Assembly (NCBI GenBank): GCA_026770705.1
Contig: JANJGN010000052.1
Span: 3,038,001 to 3,102,000 of the forward strand
Origin: Isurus oxyrinchus
Taxonomy: Eukaryota
DNA length: 64,000 bases
Reading direction: 5' to 3'
Every line of letters starts with the position of its first letter. Within the stretch, counting starts at the first letter, position 1. This document shows, one piece after another, positions 19,211 through 63,898 of this stretch. A model generated the notes under the pieces. That model had not been told where the DNA came from. It worked only from the letters and a program-made list of their open reading frames with translations, and searched no databases. The translations under genes were made by a program, and so were the position numbers.

Positions 19211-19345
19211 GTACAGGAGCTGTTTACACTCACTCCAAAGCTTCTATCTCAGTGTGTAGACAACACGTGTCCCAGATTCCCAGCCCAGTTACCCACTGAT
19301 TTGTACCTGTGGAGTCAGCAATGGTTCAGTATCATGCTGTCTCTC

Positions 19346-20103: not shown

Positions 20104-20231
20104 CTCAGTCTCTGACCCTTCATCTCTCTCTCTCTCTCTCATCCTCTCTCTGATTACAAGATTCATGTTATTGAGCCTCACACCAGGCACCTGAGTGCAG
20201 AATCCAAGCCGACACTCGCCAGAGCCATTAC

Positions 20232-20512
20232 CGAGGGAGTGCGAGACTGACAGAGGGTCAGTACTGAGGGAGTGCTGCACTGTCAGAGGGTCAGTACTGA
20301 GGGAGTGCTGCACTGTCAGAGGGTCAGTACTGAGGAAGACCTGTACTGTCGGAGGGTCAGTACTGAGGGAGTGCTGCACTGCTGGAGGGTCAGTACTGAG
20401 GGAGCGCTGCACTGTCGGAGGGTCAGTACTGAGGGAGTGCTGCACTGTTGGATGGTCAGCATTGAGGAAGTGCTGCACTATCGAAGGGTCAGTACTGAGG
20501 GAGCACTGCACT
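20232..20512 (-). repeat. 33-bp minisatellite array
   Basis: Tandem units. Confidence 0.85.
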
Positions 20513-20658
20513 GCCATAGGTGTTTTCTTTCATAAGACATGTGAGAGAGGGTTAAACCCACTGACCCACGACTGACACTAACGAGGCTGCAGAATATTTT
20601 AACCCTATCAGTGCCAGTAATTGATGTGAGGATGCCTTCTGTTTCCATTTCTCTGTAG

Positions 20659-20907
20659 GGTAAACAGAACGTGCTGATTACTGAGCCCCGGAACACAACC
20701 AGAGACACAACTAGCGAGGGGGAGACCCCAGCTCCCCGGGGTGTCTCTGAATGTGCAGTGGGAGGCGATGCTGGACATGGGAACCCTGACAATCCCGACG
20801 AGCTTCTCTACGCCAATCCCCAAGTCTTCAGGGTGCCCAGTGGTGATGGGTCTGTCCACAGGGAAGAGCAGACGGAATACGCACAGATCAGATTCAAGAG
20901 AAACTGA
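20659..20907 (+). CDS. Orphan terminal cytoplasmic exon, open, with degenerate ITIM (LLYANP) and retained TEYAQI
   Basis: ctgtag acceptor; 249 nt to TGA; paralog of 35797-36045. Confidence 0.7.
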   Translation, partial: GKQNVLITEPRNTTRDTTSEGETPAPRGVSECAVGGDAGHGNPDNPDELLYANPQVFRVPSGDGSVHREEQTEYAQIRFKRN

Positions 20908-24990: not shown

Positions 24991-25149
24991 TAGTTTCAGT
25001 GAGGGGACAAAAAAATGAGTGGTTGGAATGTAAGGAATGAAAATGTCAGGGTGTCCAGCTGATCCTATTTGTTCTGTTCTTATATTCTTATACAGACACA
25101 GGGTTTACTGACAGTGCACAGCTAAGTGCTGTTCACTCACTTTGTTCCA

Positions 25150-25289
25150 ACTTCCTCATTTTGTCTCACAGAGACACATCAACCCTTTCTCATTAAATAC
25201 ACAGAGGGAGCAGCACAGGAAGAGGTCATTCAGCCCAAGCAGAGCGTGTGGGCAGTTCCTCCCCAGGCGAGCAGTCGGACAGGTCCTGG
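25150..25289 (+). promoter_or_regulatory. Gene A presumed promoter and non-coding exon 1 (85-nt module 25205-25289)
   Basis: TGG|GTAAGT donor; ETS/PU.1-like ACTTCCTCATTTT (25150) and TTAAATA upstream; same position before all four signal-peptide exons. Confidence 0.6.
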
Positions 25290-25739
25290 GTAAGTAACGG
25301 AACGATTGGAATTCACTTCCACCACCAACACCGTCCTTTGTTGATGTTGTGACTTAATAAAGACAGATTCCAATGATTGATGCCTTTGAAAGATTTCTAC
25401 TGATTATTGAGATCTGGGTGTGAGGGTCAAGTCTGTTGTACAGAACATCTTTCTAGCTCAAGGGATGAGGGAAGTGGAGTGACATGAGATTTTGGATGCT
25501 CTGAGGTGGTGAAAGGTGCTATACAAATGCAAATCCTTCATTGTTTTTCTTCCTTAAAGCCTTGTAACTCTCTGCAGAGCACCTATCATCCCACCGTGAA
25601 TCAAATTAGTCAGTGAATACATTGTCTAAAAGGAGTTCTGATCTTTCGAGAGCTGTCGGACAAGAGGTGAGGTCTCATTAACTCCTTTCTCTTTCAGAGT
25701 TTGACAGTGAGAAGTGAATGGAATATCTGGGCGTGGACG

Positions 25740-46076: not shown

Positions 46077-46554
46077 CAGTTCTTATTGCAGATCAGGCTG
46101 TTCAACCAATGCTGCTGTTCACTGAGGTGACTCCGATTCTACATTCACACATTAATGATCTCATGTCCAGCAGCAAACATCTGAATGAAGCAAGGTTCAA
46201 GAAAAATCCCAGCTGCTTGATCCGACAGTTATCTGTTCAGGCATGGCCCCTTGTTCCAAATAACAAACATTATTTAAAAATAGTCATCACATGAGCCTGG
46301 TTAACAAGGAAATGAAACCATGAACAATTTGCAGTAAAGTGAAACGTACAGGACAATCTATTTATATAGAGCTGATGATTTATTTTACACGAGACATGTT
46401 GCTAATTTCAAACATCATCCGAACTATGGCAGTTCTGACAGTGCAGCACTCCCTTGGGACTGAATCCAGAGATACAAGGAAGAGACTGAAGAGCTGACGA
46501 TTCAGCTGAATTTAAAAACAGAGGCAGTTACAGAATCACAACAAGTTTACAGAG

Positions 46555-46700
46555 CAGAAGGAGGCCATTCAGCCCCTCGAGCCTGTTACACAGGAACTGG
46601 AGCGGCCATTCAGCCCCCTCGAGCCTGTTACACAGGAACAGGAGGAGGCCCATTCAGCCCCTCGAGACTGTTACACAGGAACAGGAAGAGGCAATTCAAC
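46555..46700 (+). repeat. Short ~42-bp tandem repeat (acaggaacaggaggaggccattcagcccctcgagcctgttac)
   Basis: 3-4 units; same family as 59320-60995. Confidence 0.75.
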
Positions 46701-46779
46701 CACATTCTTGACACCAAAGGGGTTACCAGTTTGCTTACGGTGGAAGACAGAGAGTTGGTTTCTCAAATTCACACAAACC

Positions 46780-46918
46780 AACTCACATTTTGACTCACAG
46801 AGACACATTCACCCTTTCTAATTAAATACACAGAGGGAGGAGCACAGGAAGAGGTCATTCAGCCCAAGCAGAGCGTGTGGGCAGTTCCTCCCCAGGCGAG
46901 CAGTCGGACAGGTCCTGG
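46780..46918 (+). promoter_or_regulatory. Gene B presumed promoter and non-coding exon 1 (module 46834-46918)
   Basis: Paralog of 25150-25289; TGACTCA at 46791; upstream ETS-like site absent. Confidence 0.6.
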
Positions 46919-47351
46919 GTAAGTAACGGAACAATTGGAATTCACTTCCACCACCAACACCGTCCTTTGTTGATGTTGTGACTTTATAAAGACAGATTCC
47001 AATGATTGATGCCTTTGAAAGATTTCTACTGTTTATTGAGATCTGGGTGTGAGGCTCAAGTCTGTCGTACAGAACATCTTTCTAGCTCAAGGGATGAGGA
47101 AAATGGGATGCCCTGAGCTGGTGAAAGGTGCTATAGAAATGCAAGCCCTTCATTGTTTTTCATTCTTAAAGCCTTTTAACTCTCTGCAGAACACCTATCA
47201 TCCCACAGGAAATCAAATTAGTCTTTGAAGTCATTGTCTAAAAGGAGTTCTGATCTCTCGAGAGCTGTCGGACAAGAGGTGAGGTCTCATTAATTCCTTT
47301 CTCTTTCACAGTTTGAGAGTGAGAAGTGGATGGAATATCTGGGAGTGGACA

Positions 47352-47391: not shown

Positions 47392-50300
47392 GTAATATCA
47401 TCATCAGATTTAATGTTAATAGTCTCTGTCAAGGATCATTCTTATTGAGCTGTGATTGGGAACCGATTCAGCAGTGATCCAGTGTACAAACACACACCAA
47501 GTCCCATTCACCCATCACCCCTGTGCTCACTGATATACACTGACTCCCTGTGTGACAGCAGAATTGGAAGTGATCAGAGATCTCAGAGAGTTGTAGGGAC
47601 TGGAGGACGTTACAAAGTTCAGCAGAATTGTAGCAGCGAGAGCAGGATCTTAAAATTCAGGTGCTGTCAGACGTTGGTCAGTGAGCGATGGGGAGTGATG
47701 GGTTGAGTAGAGAAGCAAAGATAAAAACTGGGGGATGAAGACTATCCTGCTGCGAGGTCTCCGATAGCAATGGCCTGAAATTTGTGTCCTTTGCTGCCTT
47801 TATTCAAAATTGTCCATGAAGACAACACAGCAGCTCCTAGAATAGACAGGCTGTTCAGTGTCACACTTCCTGTCCATTCTCACCTTGCTAGATACTTCAA
47901 TAAGGGAACAAGATAACTGAAAGAGAGAAGGGAGGCAAAGCTGTCTGTGTGTAAAACTGTCAAATATTCTGAGTTATCATGAGTGTCTCTGATCTGCTGC
48001 AGAGTTTAAATTTCACAGAATCTGAGCACTTTGCAGCTCAGAGAGAGACCATTGACTCACTGCCTGAAAGGGCGGTGGAAGCAGATTCAACAGGAACTTT
48101 CAGAAGGGGAACTGGATAAATACTTGAAGGGAAATTTGCAGGGATGTGCGAAAGGTGCTGGAGAGGAATTGGGAAAGAGCCAGCACATGCACGATGGGTC
48201 AAATGAGCTCCTCCTGTGTTGTATCATTCAACAATCAGACAATTTAAGACCCTTGTCAGCAAATCTTCAGAATCCTGCTGAATCACAGATGTTTCAGAAG
48301 GACAGGGAACAAGAAGTTTCTGGTATCAGCGTTTCATGTGGGGCCCAGTTCAGTTTGAACAAATAAACAACACCATCTTTGAAAGTCATGAACCCACCAC
48401 AGCGGCACCTCCAACACATGCAGAGCTCAGGCTAGAGGCACTTTGTTAGTGTGTTTCACAGTCTCTGCTGGAGTAGGGTCAGTGCTGAGCTTGGGGACAA
48501 GTCAGTCTACAATGCTGCATCGGAATCAACAATACAAAAATATGGGGTTTAGATCAGAAATAATCCATTAGACAATGAGGATCCAAAGAGATTCCTTAGA
48601 CAATGAGGATCCAAAGAGATTCCTTAGACAATGAGGATCCAAAGAGATTCCTCAGACAATGAGGATCCAAAGAGATTCCTTAGACAATGAGGGTCCAAAG
48701 TGATTCCTTAGACAATGAAGATACAAAGTGCACCAATCAGATTGAACCAGATTAGCTAATCAGCTGTGTTGAAGGGCAAACAGGAATGTTAGGCTAATTA
48801 GTGATTCATGACGGTGATAATGGGGGGAGTTCTGAGGGCTCCTAATCCATTGTCCTGTCTTGTAAATCAGCACTGAATGGATCTCAATGGGTGGGTCTCG
48901 TAGACACTGTGTTGGGTGGAAGACTGGCTTCACTAAGGGGAAGCGGCAGTAGAGAGGCATTGTCACTGGGCTAGTATTCCAGAGGCCCAGGGTGATGCTC
49001 TGGGGCCCTGGGTGTAAATCCCATCACAGCAGATGAATGGGATTAAAAAGCCTGGTTCACTGATCCCCTTCAGGGAAGGAAATCTCCACCCTTACCGAGT
49101 CTGGCCTACATGTCACTCCAAACCCACAGCAATACAATTGATTCTTAAATGCCTCTGATGGACATGGGATGGGTAATAAATGCTGGGCACATCCCATGAA
49201 CGGATAATTTGAAAAACACATGACTTGGAGACACTGTGTTGGGTGGAAGACTGGCTTCACTAAACAGGGTCCTGAGGACCATGAGCCAATGTAGAATGAA
49301 CTTGTCCACTCCTGTGTCCAGGATTCTCTTCCATCCATTGTGAAACCTTGGGGAGATCCCTGTGTGTCCTGTAGATGGTCCACACTGCAGCCACTGTGCC
49401 CCAGTGATGGACGGGGTGGATATCGAGTCTAGTGGATCTACAAACCATCCAGAGTTAAATATTGATATTTCTCTCCCCAGTTGGACTGTCACAAGAGTGG
49501 AAAGGTGACACTCCACGAGAGGTGACAGCGCAGGAAGATTCGTGTGTACAGATTCCATGTCATTACAGTTATCCATCACATTTGGAAAGCCAACCACGAG
49601 TCGGAGTCTGGTTTAATAATGAGAATCAGATTCCTGGATCTCCCATTGCCTTTCACTCCAAGGATCACAGTCACGAGTTACCACGGTTCCACCATCGGAC
49701 CCGGCTGTCTGGAGACCTGAAAGATGGCGACTGTTCCCTGATTATAAACAACATCAGACGGGAAGATGCAGGACCTTATTTCTTCAGGATAGAATTTGAC
49801 AGCAGTAATAGTTACAACTACTATCCTGTAACCCAGCTTCACGTTTCTGGTAAGTGCTGTGTTATAATTACTCAACAATTCACATTCAACACTCAATGGG
49901 AATTAACACAAACTGTGACGTTTACATATTAACACAAAACACAGTTTATTATAACAGACTGTCTGATTCTCAATAACCTGGTGATAGCTTCCAGTTCAGT
50001 CCTAAAGCAACCTCTAATACTCACTTTAATATCAATGATTAAATGTATTGACTGTGTCCATCAAAGTTATCAGGTTATCCACTCTCATCGATCTCTCTAA
50101 TCCTGTTTAAAATAATTTCCTGATCATTGTATCCTCTCAGTTCTGATATCATCCTTGTAAAAGTGCTTTCTCTTGTGGGACTGTGGTTTCTATTTGAACT
50201 GATGCTTCACGTTATATTTCTCTAAAAGGATCCATTCTCTGTCTGTTAGATTTCACAGATAAACCCACGATATTCCCTGCTGAAATTATTGCAGGAAAGC

Positions 50301-53300
50301 GTGTGGATGTAAGCTGCACCTTCAACACAACGTGCAATGGAACAGCAGCACCTGTCTTAACCTGGGACACTCCCACTGACGTACCTGGATCAGTCTCAAA
50401 CACTGTAACTCAGCATGGTGTCACTCTGACCTATACTTCTGTTCTGACCCTGATCCCATCACTCAAACACCATGGACACACTCTCAGCTGCAGAGTGAGA
50501 TATCCATCTGTTTCATCGGAGCGGACCCTCGTACTAACTGTACAAGGTAAGTACATACACCTTTCATTCTATATTAGCTAGAACAGTGTAGATAATGCAC
50601 AGCAGGATCCCACCAACAGCACTCCCTCAGTACTGACCCTCCCACATGCAGCACTCCCTCAGTACTGACCCTCCCACATGCAGCATTCCCTCAGTACTGA
50701 CCCTCCCACATGCAGCACTCCCTCAGTACTGACCCTCCCACATGCAGCATTCCCTCAGTACTGACCCTCCCACATGCAGCACTCACTCAGTACTGACCCT
50801 CCCACAGTGCAGCACTCCCTCAGTACTGACCCTCCCACATGCAGCACTCACTCAGTACTGACCCTCCCACAGTGCAGCATTCCCTCAGTACTGACCCTCC
50901 CACATGCAGCACTCACTCAGTACTGACCCTCCCACAGTGCAGCACTCCCTCAGTACTGACCCTCCCACATGCAGCACTCACTCAGTACTGACCCTCCCAC
51001 AGTGCAGCACTCCCTCAGTACTGACCCTCCCACATGCAGCACTCCCTCAGTACTGACCCTTTGACAGTGCTGCACTACCTCACTATTGGCTTTAAACTAA
51101 ATAGAGTGTGGGGCGAATGTTTCTGGAGAGGGTATATGTACAGTTACAAACCAAAAGGATTTATTAGCATTGCAGGATAGCTGTTTTGGCAATGATACCC
51201 AGTGTGTGACAGGAAGGGACACAGTGTCCAAACATAAAAATACATCAGCAAATAGTGTCAGAGGGGGGGAAATGATAAAAAGACAAAATTAATGGCTCTT
51301 TACTTAAATGCACAATGTATTTGGAATGCTGACCTTTATTTCAAAGGGAATGGAGTATAAAAATAGGGAAGCCTTGCTAAAACTATACAAGGCACTAGTT
51401 AGACCACACCTAGAATACTGTGAACAGTTTTGGTTCCCTTATCTAAGGAAAGATGTACTGGCATTGGAGGCAGTCCAGAGAAGGTTCACTAGGTTGATCC
51501 CAGTAATGGAGGGATTTTCATATGAGGAGAGGTTGAGTAGGATGGGCCTGTACTCATTGGAGTTTAGGAGAATGAGAGCTGACCTTATTGAAACATATAA
51601 GATTCTTAGGGTGCTTGACAGGGTAGATGCTGAGAGGTTGTTTCCCCTTGTGGGAGAGTCTAGGACCAGAGGGCATAATCTCAGAGTAAGGGGTCACCCA
51701 TTTAAGACAGAGATGAGGAGTTTCTTCTCTCAGAGGGTAGTGAATGTGTGGAATTATTTACTGCAGAGAGCTGCAGAGGCTGGGTCATTAATTATATTCA
51801 AGGCTGAGATACACAGTTTTTTAATCAGTCAGGGAATCAAAGGCTATGGGGAAGAGGCAGGAAAGTGGAGTTGAGGATTGTCAGATCAGCCATGGTGTCA
51901 CTGAATGGCGGAGCAGAGTTGATTGGCCAAATGGCCTCCTTCTGCTCTGATGTCTTGTGGTCTTATGGTCTTATCACCCTCCAACAGTGCAGAGCTCCCT
52001 AATTACTGACCCTCCGACAGTGCAGCACTCCCTCAGTACTGACCCTCTGACAGTGCAGCACTCACTCAGTACTGACCCTCCGACAGTGCAGCACTCCCTC
52101 AGTACTGACCCTCCAACAGTGCAGAGCTCCCTAATTACTGAACATCCAACAGTGCAGCACTTCCTCAGTACTGACCCTCCAACTGTGCAGAGCTCCCTAA
52201 TTACTGACGCTCCGACAATGCAGCATTCCCTAAGTACTGACCCTCCAACAGTGCAGCACTGCCTCAATACTGACCCTCCAACAGTGCAGCACTGTGTCAA
52301 TACTGACCCTCCAACAGTGCAGCACTCCCTCAGTGCTGACCCTCCGACAGTGCAGCACTCCCTCACTACTGACCCTCCGTCAGAGCAGAGCTCCTAATTA
52401 CTGACCCTCCAACAGTGCAGCACTCCCTCAGTACTGACCCTCCAACAGTGCAGAACTCCCTAATTACTGACCATCCAAAAGTGCAGCACTCCCTCAGTAC
52501 TGACCCTCCGACAGTGCAGCACTCCCTCAGTACTGACCCTCCAACAGTGCAGAACTCCCTAATTACTGACCATCCAAAAGTGCAGCACTCCCTCAGTACT
52601 GACCCTCCGACAGTGCAGCACTCCCTCAGTATTGATCCTCCGACAGAGCAACACTCCCTCAGTACTGTCCCACCGACAGTGCAGCACTCCCTCAGTACTG
52701 ATCCTCCGACAGTGCAACTCTCCCTCAGTACTGTCCCACCGACAGTGCAGCTCTCCCTCAGTACTGACCCTCCGACAGTGCAGCACTCCCTCAGTACTGA
52801 TCCTCCGACAGTGCAACACTCCCTCAGTACTGTCCCACTGACAGTGTAGCACTCCCTCAGTACTGATCCTCCGACAGTTCAACACTCCCTCAGTACTGTC
52901 CCACCGACAGTGCAGCTCTCCCTCAATACTGACCCTCCAACAGTGCACCACTCCATCAGTACTGAACCTTCAACAGTGCAGCACTCCCTCAGTACTGATC
53001 CTCCAACAGTGCAGCACTCCATCAGTACTGATTCTCCGACAGTGAAGTCCTCGCTCAGTACTGACTATGCGGCAGTGAAGCTTTCACAGTACCCACCCAC
53101 CATCAGTACAGCAGGTCCTCAGTACTCACCCTCCAACAGTGCAGCACTCCCTCAGTACTGAACTGAAGAGTCTGCCTGAATTATGTGCTCTGTGGTGAAG
53201 GATTGATATCACACCTTTAACATTGTCAGGGTCTCTGAAAGTGCTTCACAGTCAATGTAAGTAACTGATCTTTATTTGTTTTTAGATGCACCACAGAATC

Positions 53301-53747
53301 CCTCAATTACTTTTCATGATATGATTAACGCTTCATCGATCAATATAATTGAGGGGAATTCTGCAGTGATAATCTGCTCTGTCGAGAGCTTCCCAGCTTC
53401 TAACCTGACGTGGCGACATCTTAATGTCCCAATGAACAGAACAAGTTCCAACAATGAGCTGTGGTTGGTGATTCCTCACGTTACATCCAGGGACACTGGA
53501 GACTATCAGTGTGTGGCAGAGAATGAACATGGAGCAGTGGAGGGGTTCATAACCATCACTGTGGAACGTGAGTTAACACAAATTGCAATAACACTGTCAC
53601 ATACAGATGCACACACACACACATAGACATACACATGCACACACACTCACTCATGAACAGATGTATACAAACAGGCACACGCACACATGCGCAAACACAT
53701 ACACACACACACGCACACACAAACACACTCACATGTGCAGAAACACG

Positions 53748-53785: not shown

Positions 53786-56700
53786 TGAGGTTCACTCTCC
53801 TCTCTCAGGGCTGCACTGGAGTCTCGGTATCAGCCCTGATTCTGTGTTGAAGGAAGGTAAACTCCAGATCAACAAGACCCTGAATTGGATGAGCAAGCTC
53901 CTGGACAGAGAATTGTAGATTTACCCCTCAGTGCTCCATCGATCAAATACAATTCATTGCCTGTCAAGCCCTTGGCGAATTCCTGAGGATGTGAATGGAA
54001 CTTTCTTTCATTCTAGATTGACAGCACCTCAACTGGTGGGGGAATGCAACTGCAGTGTGACAGTTTACATAGGCAGTGTCCATTATAAATGTGACAGAGG
54101 AACTTATTCTGAGGAAAGGTGCCTGGAAATGCATTCAGACATCAGATACAAAGAGATGATACATGGAGTCTTGCTGTGCACTGTGCTTGCTCACTCTAAA
54201 ATCTTTATATGTTTATAGACGCACCACAGAATCTCTCAATTACTTCTCTTGATATGATTAACACTTCATCAATCAATATAATTGAGAGGAATTCTGCAGT
54301 GATAATCTGCTCTGTCGAGAGCTTCCCAGCTTCTAACCTGACGTGGCGACATCTTAATGTCCCAATGAACAGAACAAGTTCCAACAATGAGCTGTGGTTG
54401 GTGATTCCTCATGTGAGATCCAGGGACACTGGAGACTATCAGTGTGTGGCAGAGAATGAACATGGAGCAGTGGAGGGGTTCATAACCATCACTGTGGAAC
54501 GTGAGTTACACAGAATTCAACATTCTGTTTTTATTAGCTCATGGGATGTGGGTAGTGTTGACAAGACCAGAAATCATTGCCCATCTGCAACTGCCCCTTG
54601 AGAAGGTGGTGGTGAGCTGCCTTCTTTAACCACTGCAGTCCATGTGGTGTAGGTACACCCACAGTGCTGTTAGGGAGGGAGTTCCAGGATTTTGACCCAG
54701 CGACGGTGAAGGAACGGCCGATATAGTTCCTAGTCACAGGGCAGACCACCACCTCAAGTTCGCCTCCAAGTCAAACACCTCACTGACTTGGAACTGTCTC
54801 GGTGGAAGAGGTTAAGAGTTTGGAAGGTGCTGTCGAAGGAGCCTCGGTGAGTTGCTGCAGTGCATCTTGTAGATGGTGCACACACTGCTGCCATTGTGTG
54901 CCAGTGGTGGAGGGTATCAATGTTTATGCTGGTGGATGGGCTGTCGATCAAACAAGCTGCTCCTGGATGGTGTCGAGCTTCTTGAGTGTTGTTGGAGCTG
55001 CACTTATTCAGGCAATTGGAGATTATTCCATCACACTCCTGACTTGTGCCTTGTCGATGGTGGACAGGCTTTGGGGAGTCAGGAGGTGAGTTATTCACCG
55101 CAGAGTTCCCAGCCTCTGACCCGCTCTTGTAGCCACATTATTTCCTGTTGCTGGGTTGTTGCCAGGGCCAATAGCCTTTGCTGTATCCAGTATCATCAGC
55201 TGATTCCTGATGTCACATGGAGTCAATCGAATTGTCTGAAAGCTGACATCTGTGATGCTGGGACCCTCTGGAGGAGGCCGAGATGGAGCATCCACTCAGC
55301 AGTTCTGGCTGAACATGGTTGCCAATGCTTCAGCCTTGTTGTTTGCACTGATGTGCTGAGCTCCCCCATCATTAAGGATGGGGATATTTGTGGAACATTC
55401 TCCTCCTGTTAGATCTTTAATTGTCCATCACCATTCATGACTGGATGTGGCAGGACTGCAGAGCTTAGATCTGACCTGTTGGTTGTGGGATCGCTTTGTC
55501 TGTCGATAGCATGTTGTTTCCGCTTTTTGGCAGGTATGTCGTCCTGTGTGTCACCTCAGCAGCTTGGCACCTCTGTTATATGTGAATCCTCCTTATAGAA
55601 ACCTGCATGTACATGGATATTATCAATAAATATTACATAGATAAATGTTGTTTGTATAGACCTTTCATGCATAGACAATATCACTTCACAAGTTCAGAAT
55701 TACTACATGTACATAGGGAACCATTCTCAAACTGTACCGGAGTCATTCATTGGCTGATTTTACAGGGCGAGATTCCAATGAATGGAAAGCAGGATTGCTT
55801 GGAGCTGGAATCTGTTTGAGTGTTGGACTGAGTGGATTCTTCATCTTCAAGTGTGTGAGAAAGTAAGTGTGAAGGTTTAATTGGTTGTTTTTGAACATGT
55901 TTTCTTCAACCTTCTCTCCTTATAGAAAGAACTTGCATTTCTATAACATCTTTCACAACCCAAAACCCTTCACAACCCCTGAAGAGCTTTGATGTTCACT
56001 CATTGTTTAACATCTCATCCAACACTCAATGTTTCACAACTCAGTCCTGTAACAGGCAGTGTTGACCCGGACCATAAAATACCTTGTGACTTCCTGAGGA
56101 TGTGAAAGGGGATATATAAATGAAGACATTTCTTTTGTTAGTGAATGCAATCTCTTTCCATTTTCAGTGTCTAACTCACTCTCTCTCTTACCTCCACTAA
56201 TGCTCTCCTTCTCATTCTCTCTCTCTCTCATTCGCTCTCTCCCCAATCTCCACTAATGCTCTCCTTCTCATTCATTCTCTTGTCCTCTTACACGTTGTTC
56301 AGTCTCTCACAATTTTAAGGAGCGCTGAGCAACATCTGCTCCATCAGAAGATCTACCTCAACACCTGGAGCGAGCAATGAATTGAAACTCGCTCAACGAC
56401 TGTTCAGATTTACACAGGAATCACGACACAGAGTCAGGACACAAAGGGTTAACAGTTTGCTTACAACACAACACTAAGGCCTTACGTTTCAGTGAAAGGG
56501 TTTTCACAATTGTTCCCCAATTCCTCAGTTTGTCTCACAGAGACACATCAACCCTTTCTCATTAAATACACAGAGGGAGCAGCACAGGAAGAGGTCATTC
56601 AGCCCAAGCAGAGGGTGTGGGAAGTTCCTCCCCAGGCGAGCAGTCGGACAGGTACTGGGTAAGTAACGGAACGATTGGTACTCACTTCCACCACCAACAC

Positions 56701-58264
56701 CGTCCTTTGTTGATGTTGTGACTTTATAAAGACAGATTCCAATGATTGATGCCTTTGAAAGATTTCTACTGATTATTGAGATCTGGGTGTGAGGCTCAGG
56801 TCTGTTGTACAGAACATCTTTCTGGGAAAATTATGCAGACAGGTTACACACAGTCTACGATAATATTCCCTCAGGTCTAGAAGATTAAGGAGTGATCTAA
56901 TTGAGGGATTCAAAATGATTAAACACTCGAAAGGGTCGATAGAGAGAAGCTATTCCCTCGGGTGGGGGTGGGTGGTGGGGGTCGGGTGGAGTCCAGAACA
57001 AGGGGGCCGGAACTTCAGATTGGAGCCAGGCCGTTCAGGGGTGATGTCAGGAAGCACTTCTTCACACAAAGGGGAGTGGAAATCTGGAACTCTCTCCCCA
57101 ATAATCAAACCCAACACCGAATACACATCATGTTGATTGTCACTCTGTCCATTTCCATCTCTATTACAGAAGAGAGGCGAGGGGAAAGCAGGAATCAAAT
57201 CGAACCATCGTGTTGATGAATATCGAGATCCTGTTTATGAAAACTGTGAGCGTGGTTGGGCTTTGAGGAATCAGGTGAGTCACACACCACAGGATCCCCA
57301 GCCTCTCAGCTGCTCCAGTAGCCTGGTTATTGATATGGCTGCTCCAGTCCTGTATCTGCAATGTTTTATACAGTCACTCCCAAACCCAACCAAACTCACA
57401 CCCAACACCGTTCAGAATCAATAATCAAACCCCGTTCAGTATCAATAATCAAACCCCGTTCAGTATCAATAATCAAACGCCGTTCAGAATCAATAATCAA
57501 ACCCCGTTCAGAATCAATAATCAAACACCGTTCAGAATCAATAATCAAACCCCGTTCAGAATCAATAATCAAACCCCGTTCAGTATCAATAATCAAACCC
57601 CGTTCAGAATCAATAATCAAACACCGTTCAGAATCAATAATCAAACCCCGTTCAGAATCAATAATCAAACCCCGTTCAGTTTCAATAATCAAACCCCGTT
57701 CTGTATCAATAATCAAACCCCGTTCAGAATCAATAATCAAAACCCATTCAGTTTCAATAATCAAACCCCGTTCAGTATCAATAATCAAACCCCTTTCAGA
57801 ATCAATTATCAAACCCTGTTCAGTGTAAATAATCAAACCCCTTCCAGTATCAATAATCAAACCCCATTCAGAATCAATAATCAAACCCCGTTCAGAATCA
57901 ATTATCAAAACCTGTTCAGAATCAATAATCAAACTCCGTTCAGAATCAATAATCAAACCCCGTTCAGAATCAATAATCAAACTCCGTTCAGTATCAATAA
58001 TCAAACCCCGTTCAGAATCAATAATCAAACCCTGTTCAGTATCAATAATTAATGTATCTATTGTGGGTGGAATTTTCGATTTGGATTAATAATACTAAAC
58101 ACTGATCACTCTGATTGTCACTCTGATCATTTCTGTTTCTATTACAGAAGAAAGATGAGAAGGATCTGGAAATGAAATCTAACCGCGGAGTCAATCCTGA
58201 TACAGATGATGATCTTTACGCAAACTGTGATTTTGCCAAGGATTCTGTTTATGGGAATTTATAA
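47352..58264 (+). CDS. Gene B: Siglec-family receptor with a divergent TM and YxN/ITAM-like tail (SP-V-C-C2x2-TM-cyt); 557 aa in the preferred model
   Basis: join(47352-47391,49481-49849,50250-50546,53286-53567,54219-54500,55766-55862,56574-56658,57170-57274,58148-58264) is open throughout (1674 nt). Confidence 0.8.
48567..48720 (+). repeat. 28-bp minisatellite, about 5 units
   Basis: Same unit as 26946. Confidence 0.85.
49481..49849 (+). CDS. Gene B Siglec V-set exon
   Basis: SCVQIPC...GDCSLII...YFFRIE; 369 nt. Confidence 0.95.
50250..50546 (+). CDS. Gene B Ig domain 2 exon
   Basis: 297 nt; 4 aa differences from gene A. Confidence 0.93.
50617..51082 (+). repeat. 32/33-bp minisatellite array
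   Basis: cagcactccctcagtactgaccctcccacatg units. Confidence 0.9.
51308..51965 (+). mobile_element. Relatively intact CR1 LINE 3' end inserted in the minisatellite
   Basis: [24 protein letters not shown]...RLSRMGLYSLEFRRMRADLIE...FFSQRVVNVWN; ends in a tcttatgg-type tail. Confidence 0.9.
51976..53160 (+). repeat. 33-bp minisatellite array (about 35 units)
   Basis: Tandem units. Confidence 0.9.
53286..53567 (+). CDS. Gene B C2-set exon 1
   Basis: 282 nt, phase 1-1. Confidence 0.93.
54219..54500 (+). CDS. Gene B C2-set exon 2
   Basis: 282 nt, phase 1-1; intact counterpart of 31547-31827. Confidence 0.93.
54540..55570 (-). mobile_element. CR1-like LINE fragments
   Basis: SKSWNSLPNSTVGVPTPHGLQ on the - strand, same family as 18560-18995. 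Confidence 0.8.
55766..55862 (+). CDS. Gene B transmembrane exon (R)RDSNEWKAGLLGAGICLSVGLSGFFIFKCVRK
   Basis: ttttacag acceptor, AA|GTAAGT donor, 97 nt as in gene A. Confidence 0.88.
56574..56658 (+). CDS. Gene B candidate cytoplasmic exon 1 (copy of the 5' exon module), GSSTGRGHSAQAEGVGSSSPGEQSDRYW
   Basis: acacag acceptor, TGG|GTAAGT donor, 85 nt, phase 2-0; exactly restores the frame to the next exon. Confidence 0.55.
57170..57274 (+). CDS. Gene B cytoplasmic exon KRGEGKAGIKSNHRVDEYRDPVYENCERGWALRNQ
   Basis: ctattacag acceptor, CAG|GTGAGT donor, 105 nt, phase 0-0. Confidence 0.75.
57405..58049 (+). repeat. 24-bp minisatellite (aatcaaaccccgttcagaatcaat)n, about 27 units
   Basis: Tandem units; gives the INNQTPFR pseudo-ORF. 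Confidence 0.92.
58148..58264 (+). CDS. Gene B terminal exon KKDEKDLEMKSNRGVNPDTDDDLYANCDFAKDSVYGNL*
   Basis: ctattacag acceptor, phase 0, TAA at 58262-58264, followed by unique UTR-like sequence. Confidence 0.8.
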   Translation, partial: KKDEKDLEMKSNRGVNPDTDDDLYANCDFAKDSVYGNL

Positions 58265-59038
58265 ACTGAGCAAGAATGAGACACACACAGTGTGGGGAGA
58301 ATACAGAACGGGAGAATCATTCAAAACTCCAATTTACCTTCCTAATATCCACAGGAACTCACTCCCAGGAAATAGATTTAAACTTCTTGTTACAATCTGA
58401 TGGAATTTCTTTGGAATGATCTATCCAGGATGATTGTCTGTGGGTTTCAATTTGAACATCATCCTTCAGAATTGTCCCTCCCTGTTGGAAACATCCTTCT
58501 CTCCATTCTGATTGTAAATGTCTTTAGATATCGTTCGATGATGTACCAGGACAGAACGGACAAATTCAATCCCGTGTCCGTGATTATGAGTTAATTTTCA
58601 TTCTGTTATTCACCTTCCTGTCTGTCAGTGTTTACAGAATATTCATCAGCCAGTGTAGACTTCATGAAATGCAGGATCGGTGGATAATTGGAGCAGAGGA
58701 GATTGGCAAAACTTACTCACCATTTTGTAGTCAAATGTATTTTCAGAAATGTATTTTGATTTTACACTTCATCGTTAAACAGTGAAACGAACAACAATCT
58801 GGGAAACAGGGAAACAATTTGTTTGGAGATTTGAGAAGTTCTCTGCAGCTCAGAGGATAACAGATGTGCTACAGTGCCACCACTGGTGGGAGGACATCAT
58901 TTCAGCGTGACATGTTTACATTGATGTTGCCAATGAACATTGGAAATTATGATGTCAAAAATTGGTTCCAGCTTTACCTTCTTCAATATGTCATTGGATG
59001 GATGAGACAGCTTTGATAACAGAATGAAATAGAGCTGC

Positions 59039-59044
59039 AATAAA
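59039..59044 (+). terminator. Candidate polyadenylation signal of gene B
   Basis: AATAAA about 775 nt after the stop codon. Confidence 0.4.
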
Positions 59045-59319
59045 CCACCATTTTAGTCTTTCACACTTGGAGAGTACAATTAGCATCCATTCTGAAGGCT
59101 GAGTGGATGGGTGGACTGTGCGATGTGTTTCAGATTACAGAGACCAACTTTCTTGATCCTGGTTCTGCTCTATGTTTGATGACATTCTTGGATAAAAGAT
59201 TGGGAAAATAAATAATCCTCCGGCCTTAACCTGTAACTGGTCTCTCCATCTGTCAATGTCCTGAGGACAGAATTGGGTTTGAGGTCCAAAATCAGACACA
59301 TGCTTTGACTGCCCATTGA

Positions 59320-60995
59320 ATAGGAACAGGAGGAGGCCATTCAGCCCCCTCGAACCTGTTACACAGGAACAAGAGAGTACCTGAAATAAAAACAGAAAAT
59401 GCTGGAGAAACTGAGTAGGTCTGGCAGCATCTGTGGAGAGATAAACGGAATTAACATTTCGAGTCCGTATGATCCTTCTTCAGAGTCTATAAGCAAGAAG
59501 TCTATTTATCTCTCCACAGCTGCTGCCAGACCTGCTGAGTTAAGGCAGCATTTTCTGTGTTTATTTAAGATTTACAACATCTGCGGTATTTATTTTTAAT
59601 GAGACGAGGACATTCAGCCCCTCGACCCTGTTACACAGGAACAGGAGGAGGCCATTCAACCCCATGAGCCTGTTATACAGGAAAAGGAGGAGGCCATTCA
59701 GCCCCTCAAGCCTGTTACACAGGAACAGGAGGAAGCCCATTCAGCCCCTCGAGCCTATTACACAGCAACAGGAGGAGGCCCATTCAGCCCCTCGAGCCTA
59801 TTACACAGCAACAGGAGGAGGCCCATTCAGCCCCTCGAGCCTGTTACAGAGGAACAGGAGGAGGCCATTTCAGCCTCCTTGAGCCTGTTACACAAGAACA
59901 GGAGGAGGCCCCATTCAGCCCCTCGAGCCTGTTACACAGGAACAGGAGGAGGCCCATTCAGACCTTCAAGCCTCTAACACCAGAACGGAAGGAGGTCATT
60001 TCAGCCCCATGAGCTTGATGAACAGGAACAGGAGGAGGTCCATTAAGCCCCTCAAGTCAGTTACATAGGAACAGGAGAAGCCTCATTCAGCCACACGAGC
60101 ATCTTATATAAGAACATGAGGGGGCCCAAACAGCCCCTCAAGCCTCTTACACAAGAAGCAGAGGAGGAGGTTTATTCAGCCTCGAAGCTGTTATACAGGA
60201 ACAGGAGGAGGCCCATTCAGCCACACAAGCCTCTTACACAAGAACAGGAGGAGGTACATTCAGTCCCTCAAGCCTGCTACACAGGAACAGGAGGAGGCCC
60301 ATCAGCCCCCTCGAGCTTGTTACACAGGAACAGGAGGAGGCCATTCAGCCCCCTTAAGCCTGTTACACAGGAACAGGAGGAGGCCATTCAGCCCCATGAG
60401 ACTGTTATACAGGAAAAGGAGGAGGCCATTCAGCCCCTCAAGCCTGTTACACAGGAACAGGAGGAAGCCCATTCAGCCCCTCGAGCCTGTTACACAGCAA
60501 GAGGAGGAGGCCCATTCAGCCCCTCGAGCCTGTTACACAGGAACTGGAGGAGGCCATTCAGCCCCTCGAGCCTGTTACACAGCAACAGGAGGAGGCCCAT
60601 TCAGACCTTCAAGCCTCTAACACCAGAACGTAAGGACGTCATTTCAGCCCCATGAGCTTGATGAACAGGAACAGGAGGAGGTCCATTAAGCCCCTCAAGT
60701 CAGTTACATAGGAACAGGAGAAGCCTCATTCAGCCACACGAGCATCTTATATAAGAACATGAGGGGGCCCAAACAGCCCCTCAAGGCTGTTACACAAGAA
60801 GCAGAGGAGGAGGTTCATTCAGTCCCTCGAAGCTGTTACACAGGAACAGGAGGAGGCCCATTCAGCCACACAAGCCTCTTACACAAGAACAGGAGGAGGT
60901 CCATTCAGCCCCTCAAGCCTGTTACACAGGAACAGGAGGATGCCCGTTCAACCCCCTCGAGCTTGTTGCATGTGAACAGTCGATGGCCCTTCAGC
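59320..60995 (+). repeat. ~42-bp minisatellite array with a higher-order internal duplication
   Basis: acaggaacaggaggaggccattcagcccctcgagcctgttac units; a ~640-bp block repeats (about 59640-60300 vs 60370-60940). Confidence 0.88.
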
Positions 60996-61073
60996 CACAT
61001 TCTTGGCACGCAAAGGGTTGACAGTTTTCTAACTGTGCGAGGCAAAGAGCTGCTTTCTAACTTGGTACTAACC

Positions 61074-61213
61074 ACTTCCTCATTTTGTCTCACAGTGACA
61101 CATCAACCCTTTCTAATTAAACACACAGAGGGAGCAGCACAGGAAGAGGTCATTCAGCCCAAGCAGAGCGTGTGGGCAGTCCCTCCCCAGGCGAGCAGTC
61201 GGACAGGTCCTGG
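61074..61213 (+). promoter_or_regulatory. Leader C presumed promoter and non-coding exon 1 (module 61129-61213)
   Basis: Paralog of 25150-25289 with intact donor and ETS-like site. Confidence 0.6.
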
Positions 61214-61656
61214 GTAAGTAACGGAATGATTGGAATTCACTTCCACCACCAACACCGTCCTTTGTTGATGTTGTGACTTTATAAAGACAGATTCCAATGA
61301 TTGATGCCTTTGAAAGATTTCTACTGATTATTGAGATCAAGGTGTGAGACTCAAGTCTGTTGTACAGAACATCTTTCTAGCTCAAGGGATGAGGGAAGTG
61401 CAGGGACATGAGCTTTGGGGTGTCCTGAGCAGGTGAAAGGCGATATAGAAATGCAAGTCCTTCATTGTGTTACTTTCTTAAAGCCTTGTAACTCTCTGCA
61501 GAGCAACTATCATCCCACAGAGAATGAAATTAGTCTGTGAAGACATTGTCTAAAAGCAGTTCTGATCTCTCGAGAGGTGTCGGACAAGAGGTGAGGTCTC
61601 ATTAACTCATTTCTCTTTCACAGCTTGAGAACCAATGAAATACCTGGGAGTGGGCA

Positions 61657-61696
61657 ATGATCAGGAAATCTTACTTCCTCCTGTCACTTCTCCAAG
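61657..61696 (+). CDS. Leader C signal-peptide exon MIRKSYFLLSLLQ (no V exon follows before the next leader)
   Basis: Intact ATG and donor; intron homology to A and B stops at about 62902. Confidence 0.7.
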
Positions 61697-62481
61697 GTAA
61701 TATCATCGTCAGCTCGGACAGATTTATGGCTAATCATCTTTGTAAAACATAATTCTTATTGAGCTGTGATTGGGAACAGATTCAGCAGTGAGCCAGTGTA
61801 CAATCTCACACCAAGTCCCATTCACCCATCACCCCTGTGCTCACTGATATACACTGACTCCCTGTCTGACAGCAGAATTGGAGGAGAGCAGAGGACTTTG
61901 AGGTTTGCATGGTTGGAGGAGAAAGTGATTGGAGAAGAGGAATGGAGGGAATGGAAATTGAGGATGAGAGTCTTAAACTCGAGGCTCTGCTGGACTGGGA
62001 GCCAGTGCAGGTCAGCGAGTGGCAAAGGGTGTGAGGTGTTGAGTCGAGAAACAGTGATAAATACTGGGGGATGAAGTCTATCCTGATGCTTGGACGCCGA
62101 TAGCAAAGGAATGAAATTTGTGTCTTTTGCTGATTTTAATCAGAATTTCCCATGAAGACAACACAGCAGCTCCTAGAATAGACAGGCTGTTCAGTGTCAC
62201 ACTTCCTGTCCATTCTCACCTTGCTAGATACTTCAATAAGGGAGCAAGATAACTGAAAGAGAGAAGGAAGGTAAAGCTGTCCGTGTGTAAAGGGGTCAAT
62301 ATTCAAATTGTATATTTGTCTTTCTCTCGACACATGCAGAGCTCAGGCTAGAGGCGCTTTGTTAGTGTGTTTCACAGTGTCTGCTGGAGTAGGGTCAGTG
62401 CTGAGCTTGGAGACAAGTCAGTCTACAATGCTGCATCGGAATCAACAATACAACAATATGGGGTTTGGATCAGAAATAATC

Positions 62482-62746
62482 CCTTAGACAATGAGGATCC
62501 AAAGAGATTCCTTAGACAATGAGGATCCAAAGAGATTCCTTAGACAATGAGGATCCAAAGAGATTCCTTAAACAATGAGGATCCAAAAAGATTCCTTCGA
62601 CAATGAGGATCCAAAGAGATTCCTCAGACAATGTGGATCCAAAGAGATTCCTTAGACAATGAGGATCCAAAGAGATTCCTTAGACAATGAGGATCCAAAG
62701 AGTTTCCTTAGACAATGAGGATCCAAAGAGATTCCTTAGACAATGA
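62482..62746 (+). repeat. 28-bp minisatellite, about 9 units
   Basis: Same unit as 26946. Confidence 0.88.
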
Positions 62747-63308
62747 ACATACAAAGTGCACCAATCAGATTGAATCAGATTAACCAATCAGCTGTGTTGA
62801 GGAGCAGACAGGAATGTTAGGCTAATTAGTGATTCATGACGGTGATAATGGCGGGAGTTCTGAGGGCTCCTAATCCATTGTCCTGTCTTGTAAATCAGCA
62901 CCTTAATACTGACCCTCCAACAGTGCAGCACTCCCTCAGTACTGATCCTCCAACATTGCAGCACTCCCTGATTAATGTCCCTCTGACACTGCAGCACTCC
63001 CTCAGTACTGACCTTACACTAGTGCAACACTCGCTCAGTAATGACCATCCGACAGTGCAGCACTCCCTCAGTACTGACACTGGGGAGTTTCAGTCTACTC
63101 TGTGGGGCAGACGTCCCCTGAATCGGGTCTTGAACCCCACAACATTCTGACCCCCTGAATTTGGCTGTGAAACCCACTGACCCACAGGAGAAATTCCTGG
63201 TCAATAACTGTCCACCTGTGAGCAGAAATATCACCACAGGGTCAGGACACAAAGGGTTAACAGTTCACCAACATCTCAAAACATGAGCTGCTCTGACACT
63301 TTGATCCA

Positions 63309-63448
63309 ACTTCCTCATTTTGACTCACAGAGACACATCCACCCTTTCTAATTAAACACACAGAGGGAGCAGCACAGGAAGAGGTCATTCAGCCCAAGCA
63401 GAGCGTGTGGGCAGTTCCTCCCCAGGTGAGCAGTCGGACAGGTCCTGG
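63309..63448 (+). promoter_or_regulatory. Gene D presumed promoter and non-coding exon 1 (module 63364-63448)
   Basis: Has both ACTTCCTCATTT and TGACTCA (63321). Confidence 0.6.
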
Positions 63449-63898
63449 GTAAGTAACAGAACAATTGGAATTCACTTCCACCACCAACACCATCCTTTGT
63501 TGATGTTGTGACTTTATAAAGACAGATTCCAATGATTGATGCCTTTGAAAGATTTCTACTGATTATTGAGATCAGGGTGTGAGGCTCAGGTTTGTTGTAC
63601 AGAACATCTTTCTAGCTCAAAGGATGAGGGAAGTGCAGGGACATGAGCTTTGGGACATCCTGAGGTGGTGAAAGGCGATATAGAAATGCAAGTCCTTCAT
63701 TGATTTATTTTTTTAAAGCTTTTTAACTCTCTGCGGAGCACCTATCATCCCACAGAGAACCAAATTAGTCCGTGAAGACATTGTCTAAAAGCAGTTCTGA
63801 TCTCTCGAGAGCTGTCGGACAAGAGGTGAGGTCTCATTAACTCCTTTCTCTTTCACAGTTTAAGAGTCAGAAGCTAAAGGAATATCTGGGAGTGGACA

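What the first reader, a model, noticed from the sequence alone, without database searches (positions are those of the whole stretch)
56430..56823. A presumed 5'-UTR exon module is reused as a coding cytoplasmic exon in gene B
Seen: the 85-nt module about 450 nt before each signal-peptide exon (25205, 46834, 61129, 63364) has a fifth copy with about 140 nt upstream and 165 nt downstream flank inside the intron after B's TM exon. The TM exon ends in phase 2 and the tyrosine exons start in phase 0. This copy (56574-56658, cag...GTAAGT) is 1+84 nt, stop-free, and restores the frame. Only this copy has TCC changed to TAC, adding a Tyr (DRYW). Inference: exon shuffling between leader and tail built the new tail; the direction of copying is unknown. 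The copy could alternatively act as an internal promoter.
Basis: partly seen in the sequence, partly recalled or inferred. Interest (0 to 1): 0.8.

Follow-up and report, generated by a model that had tools for sequence, protein, structure and literature searches.

The report
Shared leader and tail exon, shark Siglec
In a shark immune-receptor (Siglec) gene, an 85-base exon that serves neighbouring genes as a non-coding leader really is spliced in as a coding piece of the receptor's inner tail, but this double use is ancient in sharks rather than a new invention.

Summary
The window has five copies of a block of about 0.3-0.4 kb, and the fifth lies between gene B's membrane exon and its tyrosine-tail exons.

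RNA-derived contigs show both predicted junctions, 55862>56574 and 56658>57170. They also show the direct, frame-shifting junction 55862>57170. The copy is therefore a cassette exon. Included, it gives the tyrosine-motif tail. Skipped, it gives a short tail without tyrosines, a switch like CEACAM1 exon 7.

The tail is not new. Among 225 shark and ray Siglec-like proteins retrieved, 23 carry this 28-residue segment directly after the same type of membrane exon. They come from 12 shark species in both major shark lineages. Automatic annotation already predicts the coding use.

The identity of this coding exon with the family's leader exon found no mention in three literature searches. A sevengill-shark model carries both a leader copy and a tail copy, which share derived changes. 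In the window the core block is 92-99% identical among all five copies. Both results suggest concerted evolution.

The extra Tyr is shared only with a white-shark model. The direction of the original copying, and any promoter activity of the tail copy, remain untested. The scan had noted this genome's repeated Siglec start regions on other DNA.

The parts
55766..55862 (+). Gene B transmembrane exon (97 nt). It ends with AA of a Lys codon, so the next exon must supply one base.
   Evidence: Sequence read. tblastn to white-shark model P0155 gives 97% identity. Contig X7 record 24 covers it and joins it to 56574.
56420..56573 (+). Upstream flank of the module, homologous to the leader copies and more diverged than the core. 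It holds the polypyrimidine tract and AG acceptor used in gene B.
   Evidence: The last 27 nt translate to the same 9 residues as the N-terminus of the sevengill-shark model P0183.
56574..56658 (+). The module as a cassette exon of gene B (1+84 nt). It encodes a 28-residue juxtamembrane segment ending in ..SDRYW.
   Evidence: GT..AG joints 55862>56574 (X7) and 56658>57170 (X4, X7), and X1 loose ends carrying the TAC variant. Translation. 25 of 28 residues identical to P0155.
56659..56823 (+). 165 nt of intron after the module. It is 97-99% identical among all five copies in the 56688-56788 bin, which makes it better conserved than the exon.
   Evidence: No Rfam family. No unusual fold, z -0.12.
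56838..57099 (.). Interspersed repeat that follows the end of the homology.
   Evidence: 77.6% identity to 2430-2713. Many unrelated contigs pile up here (tables 2 and 7).
57170..57274 (+). Tail exon 1 (35 codons, phase 0 to 0), with the motifs ..DEYRDPVYENC... In the skip frame a TGA falls at 57264-57266.
   Evidence: 94% identity to P0155. Joints 56658>57170, 55862>57170 and 57274>58148.
58148..58264 (+). Tail exon 2 (38 codons plus stop), with ..DLYANC.. and a C-terminal ..SVYGNL.
   Evidence: 90% identity to P0155. Contigs run on from this exon into the 3' UTR (records 10 and 30).
58265..59297 (+). 3' untranslated region of gene B.
   Evidence: Contigs cover it up to 59102 (X7) and 59297 (X4). 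AATAAA at 59039 and 59207.
25205..25289 (+). Leader copy of gene A. The signal-peptide ATG is at 25740.
46834..46918 (+). Leader copy of gene B itself. The signal-peptide exon starts at 47312, with its ATG at 47352.
61129..61213 (+). Leader copy of gene C. The ATG is at 61657.
63364..63448 (+). Leader copy of gene D. The ATG is at 63899.

Best explanation
The fifth copy is a working cassette exon of gene B, a Siglec-type receptor with a V-set domain, C2-set domains and one membrane span.

**How it works.**
- Gene B's membrane exon ends two bases into a codon, and the tyrosine-tail exons start on a whole codon.
- The 85-nt module (1+84) bridges the two. It adds a 28-residue juxtamembrane segment and puts tail exons 1 and 2 in frame.
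- In frame, the tail carries tyrosine motifs including a C-terminal S-x-Y-x-x-L.
- If the exon is skipped, tail exon 1 is read out of frame. The protein then ends after 31 further residues without any tyrosine.
- That stop lies 8 nt before the last exon junction, so the message should escape nonsense-mediated decay.

This is a long-tail/short-tail switch of the kind known from CEACAM1 exon 7.

**What is shown and what is inferred.** The junctions are shown. That the switch is regulated and used by the animal is inferred.

**History.** The exon is not a recent acquisition. It is the standard exon after this type of membrane exon throughout sharks. The leader exons of the neighbouring Siglec genes are copies of the same unit of about 0.4 kb: upstream flank with the acceptor, the exon, and 165 nt of intron. 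Leader and tail copies stay alike within a genome, most likely through gene conversion. Which role came first is not settled.
For: **Splicing.**
- GT..AG joint 55862>56574: X7, 1 contig, 40 nt on the shorter side.
- Joint 56658>57170: X4, side 34, and X7, side 71. These come from two studies and two organism labels.
- In X1, loose ends read from the module's end, with the TAC variant, into 57170 and back.
- Joint 57274>58148: X4 and X7.
- Skip joint 55862>57170: X1, 1 contig, side 30.

**Frames.**

**Gene models.**
- White shark P0155 reads TM, module (25 of 28 identical, same ..SDRYW), tail 1 (94%) and tail 2 (90%).
- Basking shark P0153 and P0154 have the same layout.

**Breadth.** 24 of 225 retrieved proteins carry a module-like peptide, and 23 of them carry it directly after the B-type membrane span. 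They come from 12 species, including Heterodontus, Pristiophorus and Heptranchias.

**Leader use.**
- The module is joined to the signal-peptide exon in models P0156, P0157, P0158 and P0196.
- In the sevengill model P0183 the module is joined to a V-set exon. The same protein also has the tail module.

**Concerted evolution.**
- The P0183 leader against its own tail gives 1 conflict of 54 overlapping-frame residues. Against the other tails, with the void Cetorhinus P0153 rows left out, it gives 3-11.
- 3 of 7 inferred leader changes are shared with its own tail. Against 8 other tails the count is 0 or 1.
- In the window, the block 56588-56788 is 92-99% identical among all five copies. The leader introns beyond it are 71-95% identical.

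**Analogue.** PMC2490704, passages read.
Against: - Every RNA run was labelled 'RNA?' and stored as contigs. Each junction therefore rests on one contig per run, depths cannot rank isoforms, and no single contig spans TM, module and tail together.
- TM>module was seen only in X7, whose 3' UTR differs from the window by 42 of 958 letters. X7 is therefore a related species or a paralogue.
- In X1 the skip contig has a depth figure (1855.6) close to the whole depth of the 55700-55820 bin, which holds most of the TM exon (2056). Skipping may predominate there.
- None of the 225 retrieved protein models has the skip-frame tail, so the short form has no support from annotation.
- The cross-species evidence comes from automatic gene models, some of them plainly read-through chimeras.
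- The concerted-evolution test uses peptides in two frames, not DNA, and only one non-lamniform leader.
- Selection on the block could mimic gene conversion.
Confidence: 0.75

Rival explanations
1. Recent, lineage-specific exon shuffling: a leader exon was copied into gene B's intron and created a new tyrosine tail in this species or its near relatives.
For: The tail copy is 95-96% identical to the leader copies, intron flanks included. No other gene in the window has this tail.
Against: The same TM-module-tail order is found in 12 shark species from both Galeomorphii and Squalomorphii. Module peptides there have diverged to as few as 12-17 of 28 identical residues, which indicates age. The high identity within the window is better explained by homogenisation.
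Confidence: 0.07
2. The copy acts mainly as an internal promoter and first exon. Transcripts would start at or near 56574 and carry only the tail exons, and the module>tail junctions would come from those transcripts.
For: The copy keeps about 150 nt of the flank that lies upstream of the leader exons. Module>57170 joints are seen in more runs than TM>module. The TM>module contig and the module>tail contig are separate.
Against: A TM>module joint exists (X7). Models in 12 species read through TM, module and tail in frame. A tail-only transcript has no signal peptide or membrane span. Contigs cannot show transcript starts (header), so there is no positive evidence.
Confidence: 0.1
3. Dead relic. 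This was my own starting idea. A deletion removed the body of a downstream gene and left its leader exon stranded before its tail exons. Gene B's real product would then end in the skip-frame tail or in a small terminal exon at 56320.
For: The skip joint 55862>57170 is present, with a high depth figure, in X1. An open exon-like stretch with a stop exists at 56320-56380.
Against: Inclusion junctions were seen in three runs. No joint to 56320 was listed. Neither the skip-frame peptide nor the 56320 peptide occurs in any of the 225 retrieved proteins. The 28-residue segment is conserved across sharks.
Confidence: 0.04
4. Leader and tail copies are alike because of repeated fresh copying in each lineage, or because of strong selection on the block, and not because of gene conversion.
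For: The 165-nt intron flank is 97-99% identical in all five copies in the 56688-56788 bin, which could reflect a function such as splicing or transcription control. Only one non-lamniform leader was available.
Against: Selection alone does not explain why the sevengill leader and tail share derived changes that the other species' tails lack. No RNA family or special fold was found in the flank.
Confidence: 0.2

Closest known systems
CEACAM1 exon 7 (53 nt) long/short cytoplasmic-tail switch
   Same: A small cassette exon whose length is not a multiple of three lies after the membrane exon. Inclusion sets the frame for a long tail with tyrosine inhibitory motifs. Exclusion shifts the frame to a nearby stop and a short tail (PMC2490704, passages read). 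Gene B shows both inclusion and skipping junctions with the matching frame consequences.
   Different: The gene family is different, and the exon is 85 nt rather than 53 nt. Regulation of inclusion was not studied here. The short form has no support from annotation. The CEACAM1 passages read make no mention of that exon doubling as another gene's leader.
Siglec receptors (CD33-related / CD22 / MAG group) as annotated in sharks
   Same: Pfam places the exons in V-set with Ig_CD22-type first domain, C2-set_2 and Ig_3. The nearest proteins are named Siglec-13, Siglec-12, CD33-like and MAG-like by NCBI. Gene A has the tail with ..LLYANINF.. and ..TEYTQI.. motifs.
   Different: Gene B's tail is a different type, with two related tyrosine exons after the module. 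The names are automatic and imply no one-to-one orthology with mammalian Siglecs.
Exon duplication/shuffling with concerted evolution (gene conversion) in tandem immune-receptor families
   Same: A DNA-level copy includes the intron flanks. Copies within one genome are more alike than expected for their age.
   Different: The two roles differ in kind: an untranslated leader exon versus an internal coding exon. I know of no described case, and three literature searches (listings only) found nothing on shark Siglec leader or tail exons.

Membership tests
Siglec (sialic-acid-binding Ig-like lectin) | N-terminal V-set Ig domain followed by C2-set Ig domains, one membrane span and a cytoplasmic tail | tested here: met
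   Pfam finds V-set (E 9e-13) and Ig_CD22 (E 4e-9) on 49483-49851, C2-set_2 on 50198-50578, and Ig_3 on 53261-53623 and 54200-54598. The TM exon was read.
Siglec (sialic-acid-binding Ig-like lectin) | Conserved arginine in the V-set domain that binds sialic acid (feature recalled from the literature) | tested here: inconclusive
   The V-set exon has ..YFFRIEF.., the place where I recall this Arg. No structural alignment was made.
ITIM-bearing inhibitory receptor | Cytoplasmic [S/I/V/L]-x-Y-x-x-[I/V/L] motif (consensus recalled) | tested here: met
   Tail exon 2 ends ..SVYGNL, but only in the frame set by inclusion of the module. Phosphorylation and phosphatase binding were not tested.
Frame-switching cassette exon (CEACAM1 exon 7 type) | Exon length not divisible by three, lying between the membrane exon and the tail exons | tested here: met
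   85 nt, at 56574-56658.
Frame-switching cassette exon (CEACAM1 exon 7 type) | Both inclusion and exclusion forms present in RNA | tested here: met
   Joints 55862>56574 and 56658>57170 (inclusion) and 55862>57170 (exclusion). Each rests on single contigs.
Frame-switching cassette exon (CEACAM1 exon 7 type) | Exclusion gives a nearby stop and a short tail without signalling motifs | tested here: met
   The skip frame reads 31 residues and then TGA at 57264-57266, with no Tyr.
Frame-switching cassette exon (CEACAM1 exon 7 type) | Inclusion regulated by cell type or stimulus | not testable with these tools
   Contig depths cannot rank isoforms (header), and tissue labels were coded.
Non-coding first (leader) exon, for the other four copies | Spliced to the signal-peptide exon upstream of the start codon | tested here: inconclusive
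   Not tested on this genome's RNA. Models of related sharks join the module to the signal-peptide exon (P0156, P0157, P0158, P0196). Contigs with the leader-type letters dominate the depth at 56614 and 56622 (table 3).
Non-coding first (leader) exon, for the other four copies | Transcription starts at or just upstream of it | not testable with these tools
   Contigs show no starts. X4 record 9 begins at 56572. The X5 record 16 contig carries 128 other letters joined exactly at 56574.
Concerted evolution by gene conversion | Paralogous copies within a genome more alike than orthologous copies between genomes | tested here: inconclusive
   Met in the one case available: the sevengill leader against its own tail gives 1 conflict of 54, with 3 of 7 changes shared, against 0 or 1 for 8 other tails. 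The test was done on peptides only, because orthologous DNA could not be fetched.

The most novel reading that the evidence does not exclude
One module of about 0.4 kb serves two roles. It is the non-coding leader (with promoter-proximal flank) of an expanding Siglec family, and it is the frame-setting juxtamembrane coding exon of the tyrosine-tailed members. The two roles have been kept alike by gene conversion since before the two great shark lineages split. Because every leader copy keeps a working acceptor, a membrane exon can splice into the next gene's leader and signal exon. This gives the cluster a built-in route to new tails and gene fusions.
Probability: 0.4. Interest if true: 0.7.

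Novelty: new variant of a known kind. Interest (0 to 1): 0.55.

Why it matters
- It gives a concrete, RNA-supported case in which the same exon sequence is untranslated leader in some genes and coding sequence in another. That is a rarely documented form of exon reuse.
- It shows that an immune receptor of sharks can toggle between a signalling tail and a bare tail by including or skipping one exon. The CEACAM1 switch in mammals works the same way, which points to convergent logic in receptor families that evolved separately.
- The within-genome similarity of copies that play different roles makes the locus a natural test bed for gene conversion between non-equivalent exons.
- It matters for annotation of shark Siglec clusters, where read-through models are already deposited as proteins.

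Tried and rejected
- **Deletion relic.** My first idea was that the copy is the stranded leader of a deleted downstream gene. I gave it up after one search showed the junctions and one search showed the conservation.
- **Terminal exon at 56320.** No joint was listed and no protein matched.
- **Acceptor five bases inside tail exon 1.** I considered by eye an acceptor with the exon starting at 57175, which would also restore the frame without the module. No such joint was listed.
- **Small RNA in the conserved intron flank.** Rfam gave only one chance-level hit (E 7.3), inside the exon. The fold is no better than shuffles, z -0.12.
- **Homology between the module and gene A's own linker exon (34202-34283).** BLASTP found no alignment.
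- **Homologues of the tail exons elsewhere in the window.** There are none. The orphan cassettes at 17695-20904 are of gene A's type.
- **Similarity of the module's first third to the ~42-nt satellite upstream of two leaders.** It is only slightly above shuffles: scores 16 and 19, against shuffle maxima of 15 and 17.
- **Orthologous DNA.** All cross-species statements therefore rest on proteins.
- **Literature.** Three searches were read as listings only and showed nothing on shark Siglec leader or tail exons. Supplementary files were not consulted.
- **Spliced model.** The joined spliced model of gene B was not searched. Exons were searched one at a time.

Full report
**What the window is.** The window holds a tandem cluster of Siglec-type receptor genes of a shark.
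- Pfam places gene B's exons in V-set/Ig_CD22, C2-set_2 and Ig_3.
- The nearest proteins are NCBI models named Siglec-12, Siglec-13, CD33-like and MAG-like, from white shark, basking shark and other sharks.
- Self-comparison shows gene A (about 25.2-36 kb), gene B (46.8-59.3 kb), a short gene C (61.1-62.9 kb) and the start of gene D (from 63.4 kb).
- I cannot name the species. The RNA runs were coded. Gene B's tail exons are 94% and 90% identical to white-shark model P0155. That fits a close relative or a paralogue.

**The observation.** It is correct.
- BLAST of 56200-57100 against the window gives four further copies, at 25142-25454 (96.2%), 61072-61378 (94.8%), 46786-47083 (95.0%) and 63230-63613 (86.4%, extending back to 56420). 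E-values are 1e-134 or lower.
- All four end at 56823, after which the B copy runs into an interspersed repeat at 56838-57099.
- In the 85-nt exon the B copy differs from all four others at 56614, 56622 and 56654. The last change turns TCC into TAC.
- The phases are as stated. The TM exon 55766-55862 ends with AA of a Lys codon. The module is 1+84 nt and open in the needed frame. Tail exon 1 is 35 whole codons, and tail exon 2 ends in a stop.
- 'Stop-free' is not strong evidence, because all three forward frames are open across the module.
- Gene A has the same TM phase but its own 82-nt (1+81) linker exon before its ITIM exon. Some exon of this phase class is therefore needed in this gene family.

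**RNA evidence.** The look-up of sequencing runs gave runs labelled 'RNA?' under two coded organism names. I laid four of them, from three studies, on 55700-59300. All four are stored as contigs, so depth cannot rank isoforms and starts cannot be seen. GT..AG joints at exon borders show that the material is spliced RNA.

| Joint | Runs | Detail |
|---|---|---|
| 55862>56574 (TM to module) | X7 | 1 contig, 40 nt on the shorter side |
| 56658>57170 (module to tail 1) | X4, X7 | sides 34 and 71 |
| 57274>58148 (tail 1 to tail 2) | X4, X7 | sides 103 |
| 55862>57170 (skip) | X1 | 1 contig, side 30 |

- In X1, loose ends read from the module's last letters, with the TAC variant, into 57170 and from 56658 into tail exon 1.
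- The skip contig's depth figure (1855.6) is close to the whole depth of the 55700-55820 bin in X1 (2056), which holds most of the TM exon.
- No single contig spans TM, module and tail. The TM>module contig and the module>tail contig of X7 overlap by only about 27 nt.
- X7's 3' UTR differs from the window at 42 of 958 letters, so X7 is a relative or a paralogue.
- At 56614 and 56622 nearly all depth carries the leader-type letters (table 3). The other copies in the genome are therefore abundant in RNA as exons, while their flanks are covered far less (table 2).

**Consequences of the two forms.**
- With the module, the frame runs through tail exon 1 (..DEYRDPVYENC..) and tail exon 2 (..DLYANC.., C-terminal ..SVYGNL).
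- Without it, tail exon 1 is read as 31 residues lacking tyrosine and stops at 57264-57266. That is 8 nt before the last exon junction. By the usual 50-55-nt rule (established knowledge, recalled), this should spare the message from nonsense-mediated decay.
- This is the logic of CEACAM1 exon 7. There, inclusion shifts the frame to a distant stop and a long ITIM tail, and exclusion gives a proximal stop and a short tail (PMC2490704, passages read).
- The module's acceptor has a pyrimidine tract broken by A's (12 of 18 pyrimidines, against 14 of 18 for both tail exons). Its donor is a strong GTAAGT. That is compatible with optional use but proves nothing.

**The tail is old.** I searched gene B's V-set exon alone against the representative library. 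I then used three region-limited searches seeded with returned shark proteins. In all, 225 proteins were retrieved.
- A local alignment of the window's module peptide finds 24 of 225 with score 45 or more.
- 23 of the 24 carry it directly after a membrane span of gene B's type (..FIFKCVRK). They come from 12 species: white shark, basking shark, small-spotted catshark, starry smooth-hound, whale shark, two bamboo sharks, epaulette shark, zebra shark, horn shark, Japanese sawshark and sharpnose sevengill shark (names).
- Three more models have a shortened version.
- Identity to the window falls from 25 of 28 (white shark P0155) to 12-17 of 28 in the distant orders.
- Heptranchias is a squalomorph and Carcharodon a galeomorph. 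The coding use therefore goes back to the common ancestor of living sharks.
- The ray proteins retrieved show other linkers. The searches were seeded with shark sequence, so absence in rays is not established.
- Membrane spans of gene A's type are always followed by the RKTA.. linker and the ITIM exon.
- The Tyr of ..SDRYW is shared only with white-shark P0155 and P0161. None of the 225 proteins has the skip-frame tail or the 56320 peptide.

**The leader role, and read-through.** Models of relatives support it.
- P0196 (white shark) begins inside a module and runs into the signal-peptide exon.
- P0156 (white shark) reads TM, leader-type module, then signal-peptide exon in a shifted frame.
- P0157 and P0158 (basking shark) read TM, module, a second module in another frame, then signal-peptide exon.
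- These read-through models show that the AG in front of a leader copy can serve as an acceptor for an upstream gene's TM exon.
- In one search, one X5 contig carries 128 other letters joined exactly at 56574. Its origin is unknown.

**Both roles in a distant shark, evolving together.** The N-terminus of the sevengill model P0183 is a leader module read in another frame. It includes nine residues (QPFLIKYTE) that match the translation of the 27 nt just upstream of the window's modules, and it is spliced to a V-set exon. The same protein has the tail module after its TM. Because the two peptides are translations in overlapping frames, I asked whether one DNA sequence could encode both.
- The sevengill leader against its own tail leaves 1 conflict of 54 residues. 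Against the other tails it leaves 3-11.
- The window's leader against the window's tail leaves 1 conflict.
- The rows for Cetorhinus P0153 are void, because my slice was off by one.
- By parsimony against the window's leader DNA, 3 of the 7 changes inferred for the sevengill leader are the same changes inferred for its own tail. Against eight other tails the count is 0 in seven and 1 in one. The other four changes fall on positions that are silent in the tail frame.
- In the window, 100-column bins show 92-99% identity among all five copies over 56588-56788. The upstream bin 56491-56588 gives 70-89% among all five copies. The leader introns from 56788 to about 57129 give 71-95% among the four leader copies.
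- Genes A and B are otherwise about 89-90% alike.
- Copies in one genome thus look more alike than their age allows, which points to gene conversion. Selection on the block, or repeated recopying, is not excluded.
- The 165-nt intron flank matches no RNA family and has no special fold. Its conservation is unexplained.

**Direction of copying.** This is not settled. The coding role is documented in 12 species. The leader role is documented only in lamniform models and one sevengill model. Both roles therefore seem to predate the split of the two shark lineages. Outgroup DNA is needed.

**What is known and what is new.** Automatic annotation already predicts the coding exon in several sharks, so the protein is not new. 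Three searches of the held literature returned nothing on shark Siglec leader or tail exons (listings only). I therefore rate the dual use with concerted evolution, and the frame switch, as a new variant of known kinds: exon duplication with conversion, and a CEACAM1-type switch.

**Earlier notes of this scan.** They identified the neighbourhood as a shark Siglec cluster. They also reported about twenty tandem start-region cassettes on another piece of this genome. That fits the high RNA depth of leader-type module contigs, but I did not check it.

**Limits.**
- All RNA evidence is from contigs of coded runs.
- The joined spliced model was not searched.
- Supplementary files were not consulted.

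Noticed in passing
window 56659-56823 and the same stretch after 25289, 46918, 61213 and 63448: The 165 nt of intron after the module are better conserved than the exon itself: 97-99% among all five copies in the 56688-56788 bin. There is no Rfam match and no special fold, so the reason is unknown.
   Followed up: partly
window 56574 (X5 record 16): A 199-nt contig lies on 56574-56644 with its last 71 letters. Its first 128 letters fit nothing in 55700-59300, and the break falls exactly at the acceptor. Some other exon is spliced to a module copy somewhere in that organism.
   Followed up: no
proteins P0156, P0157, P0158 and P0192 (white shark, basking shark, catshark): Deposited gene models read from one gene's membrane exon into the next gene's leader and signal-peptide exon in a shifted frame. 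These are read-through chimeras across tandem Siglec genes.
   Followed up: partly
window 57404-58052 and 57100-57115: A tandem array of a repeat unit with a period near 36 nt fills the intron between the two tail exons, and a fragment of the same unit lies just before tail exon 1. The two tail exons and their acceptor regions look like a tandem duplicate.
   Followed up: no
window 46464-46790 and 59322-61000: Arrays of a repeat of about 42 nt lie directly upstream of the leader copies of genes B and C. The unit resembles module bases 6-32 (up to 23 of 26), only slightly above shuffled controls.
   Followed up: partly
window 17695-17964, 19109-19234 and 20641-20904: Orphan linker and ITIM-type tail exons of gene A's kind, some with in-frame stops, have no Ig exons nearby (tblastn).
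   Followed up: no
window 61129-62900: Gene C has a leader copy, a signal-peptide exon and pieces matching gene A/B introns. No intact V-set or TM exon was found, so it looks truncated.
   Followed up: no
window about 56525-56535 and the same place in the four leader copies: A TTCCTC core (GAGGAA on the other strand) lies about 40 nt upstream of the exon. From memory it resembles an Ets/PU.1-type site of myeloid promoters. This is a lead only and was not tested.
   Followed up: no
proteins P0155 (tail module) and P0196 (leader module), white shark: Both have Met where all five window copies have Val, at the same module position. This may be another sign of exchange between leader and tail copies within a genome.
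   Followed up: no
protein P0162 (starry smooth-hound): The model uses only the first 14 residues of the module before tail exon 1. That implies an internal donor which still keeps the 1+3n length.
   Followed up: no
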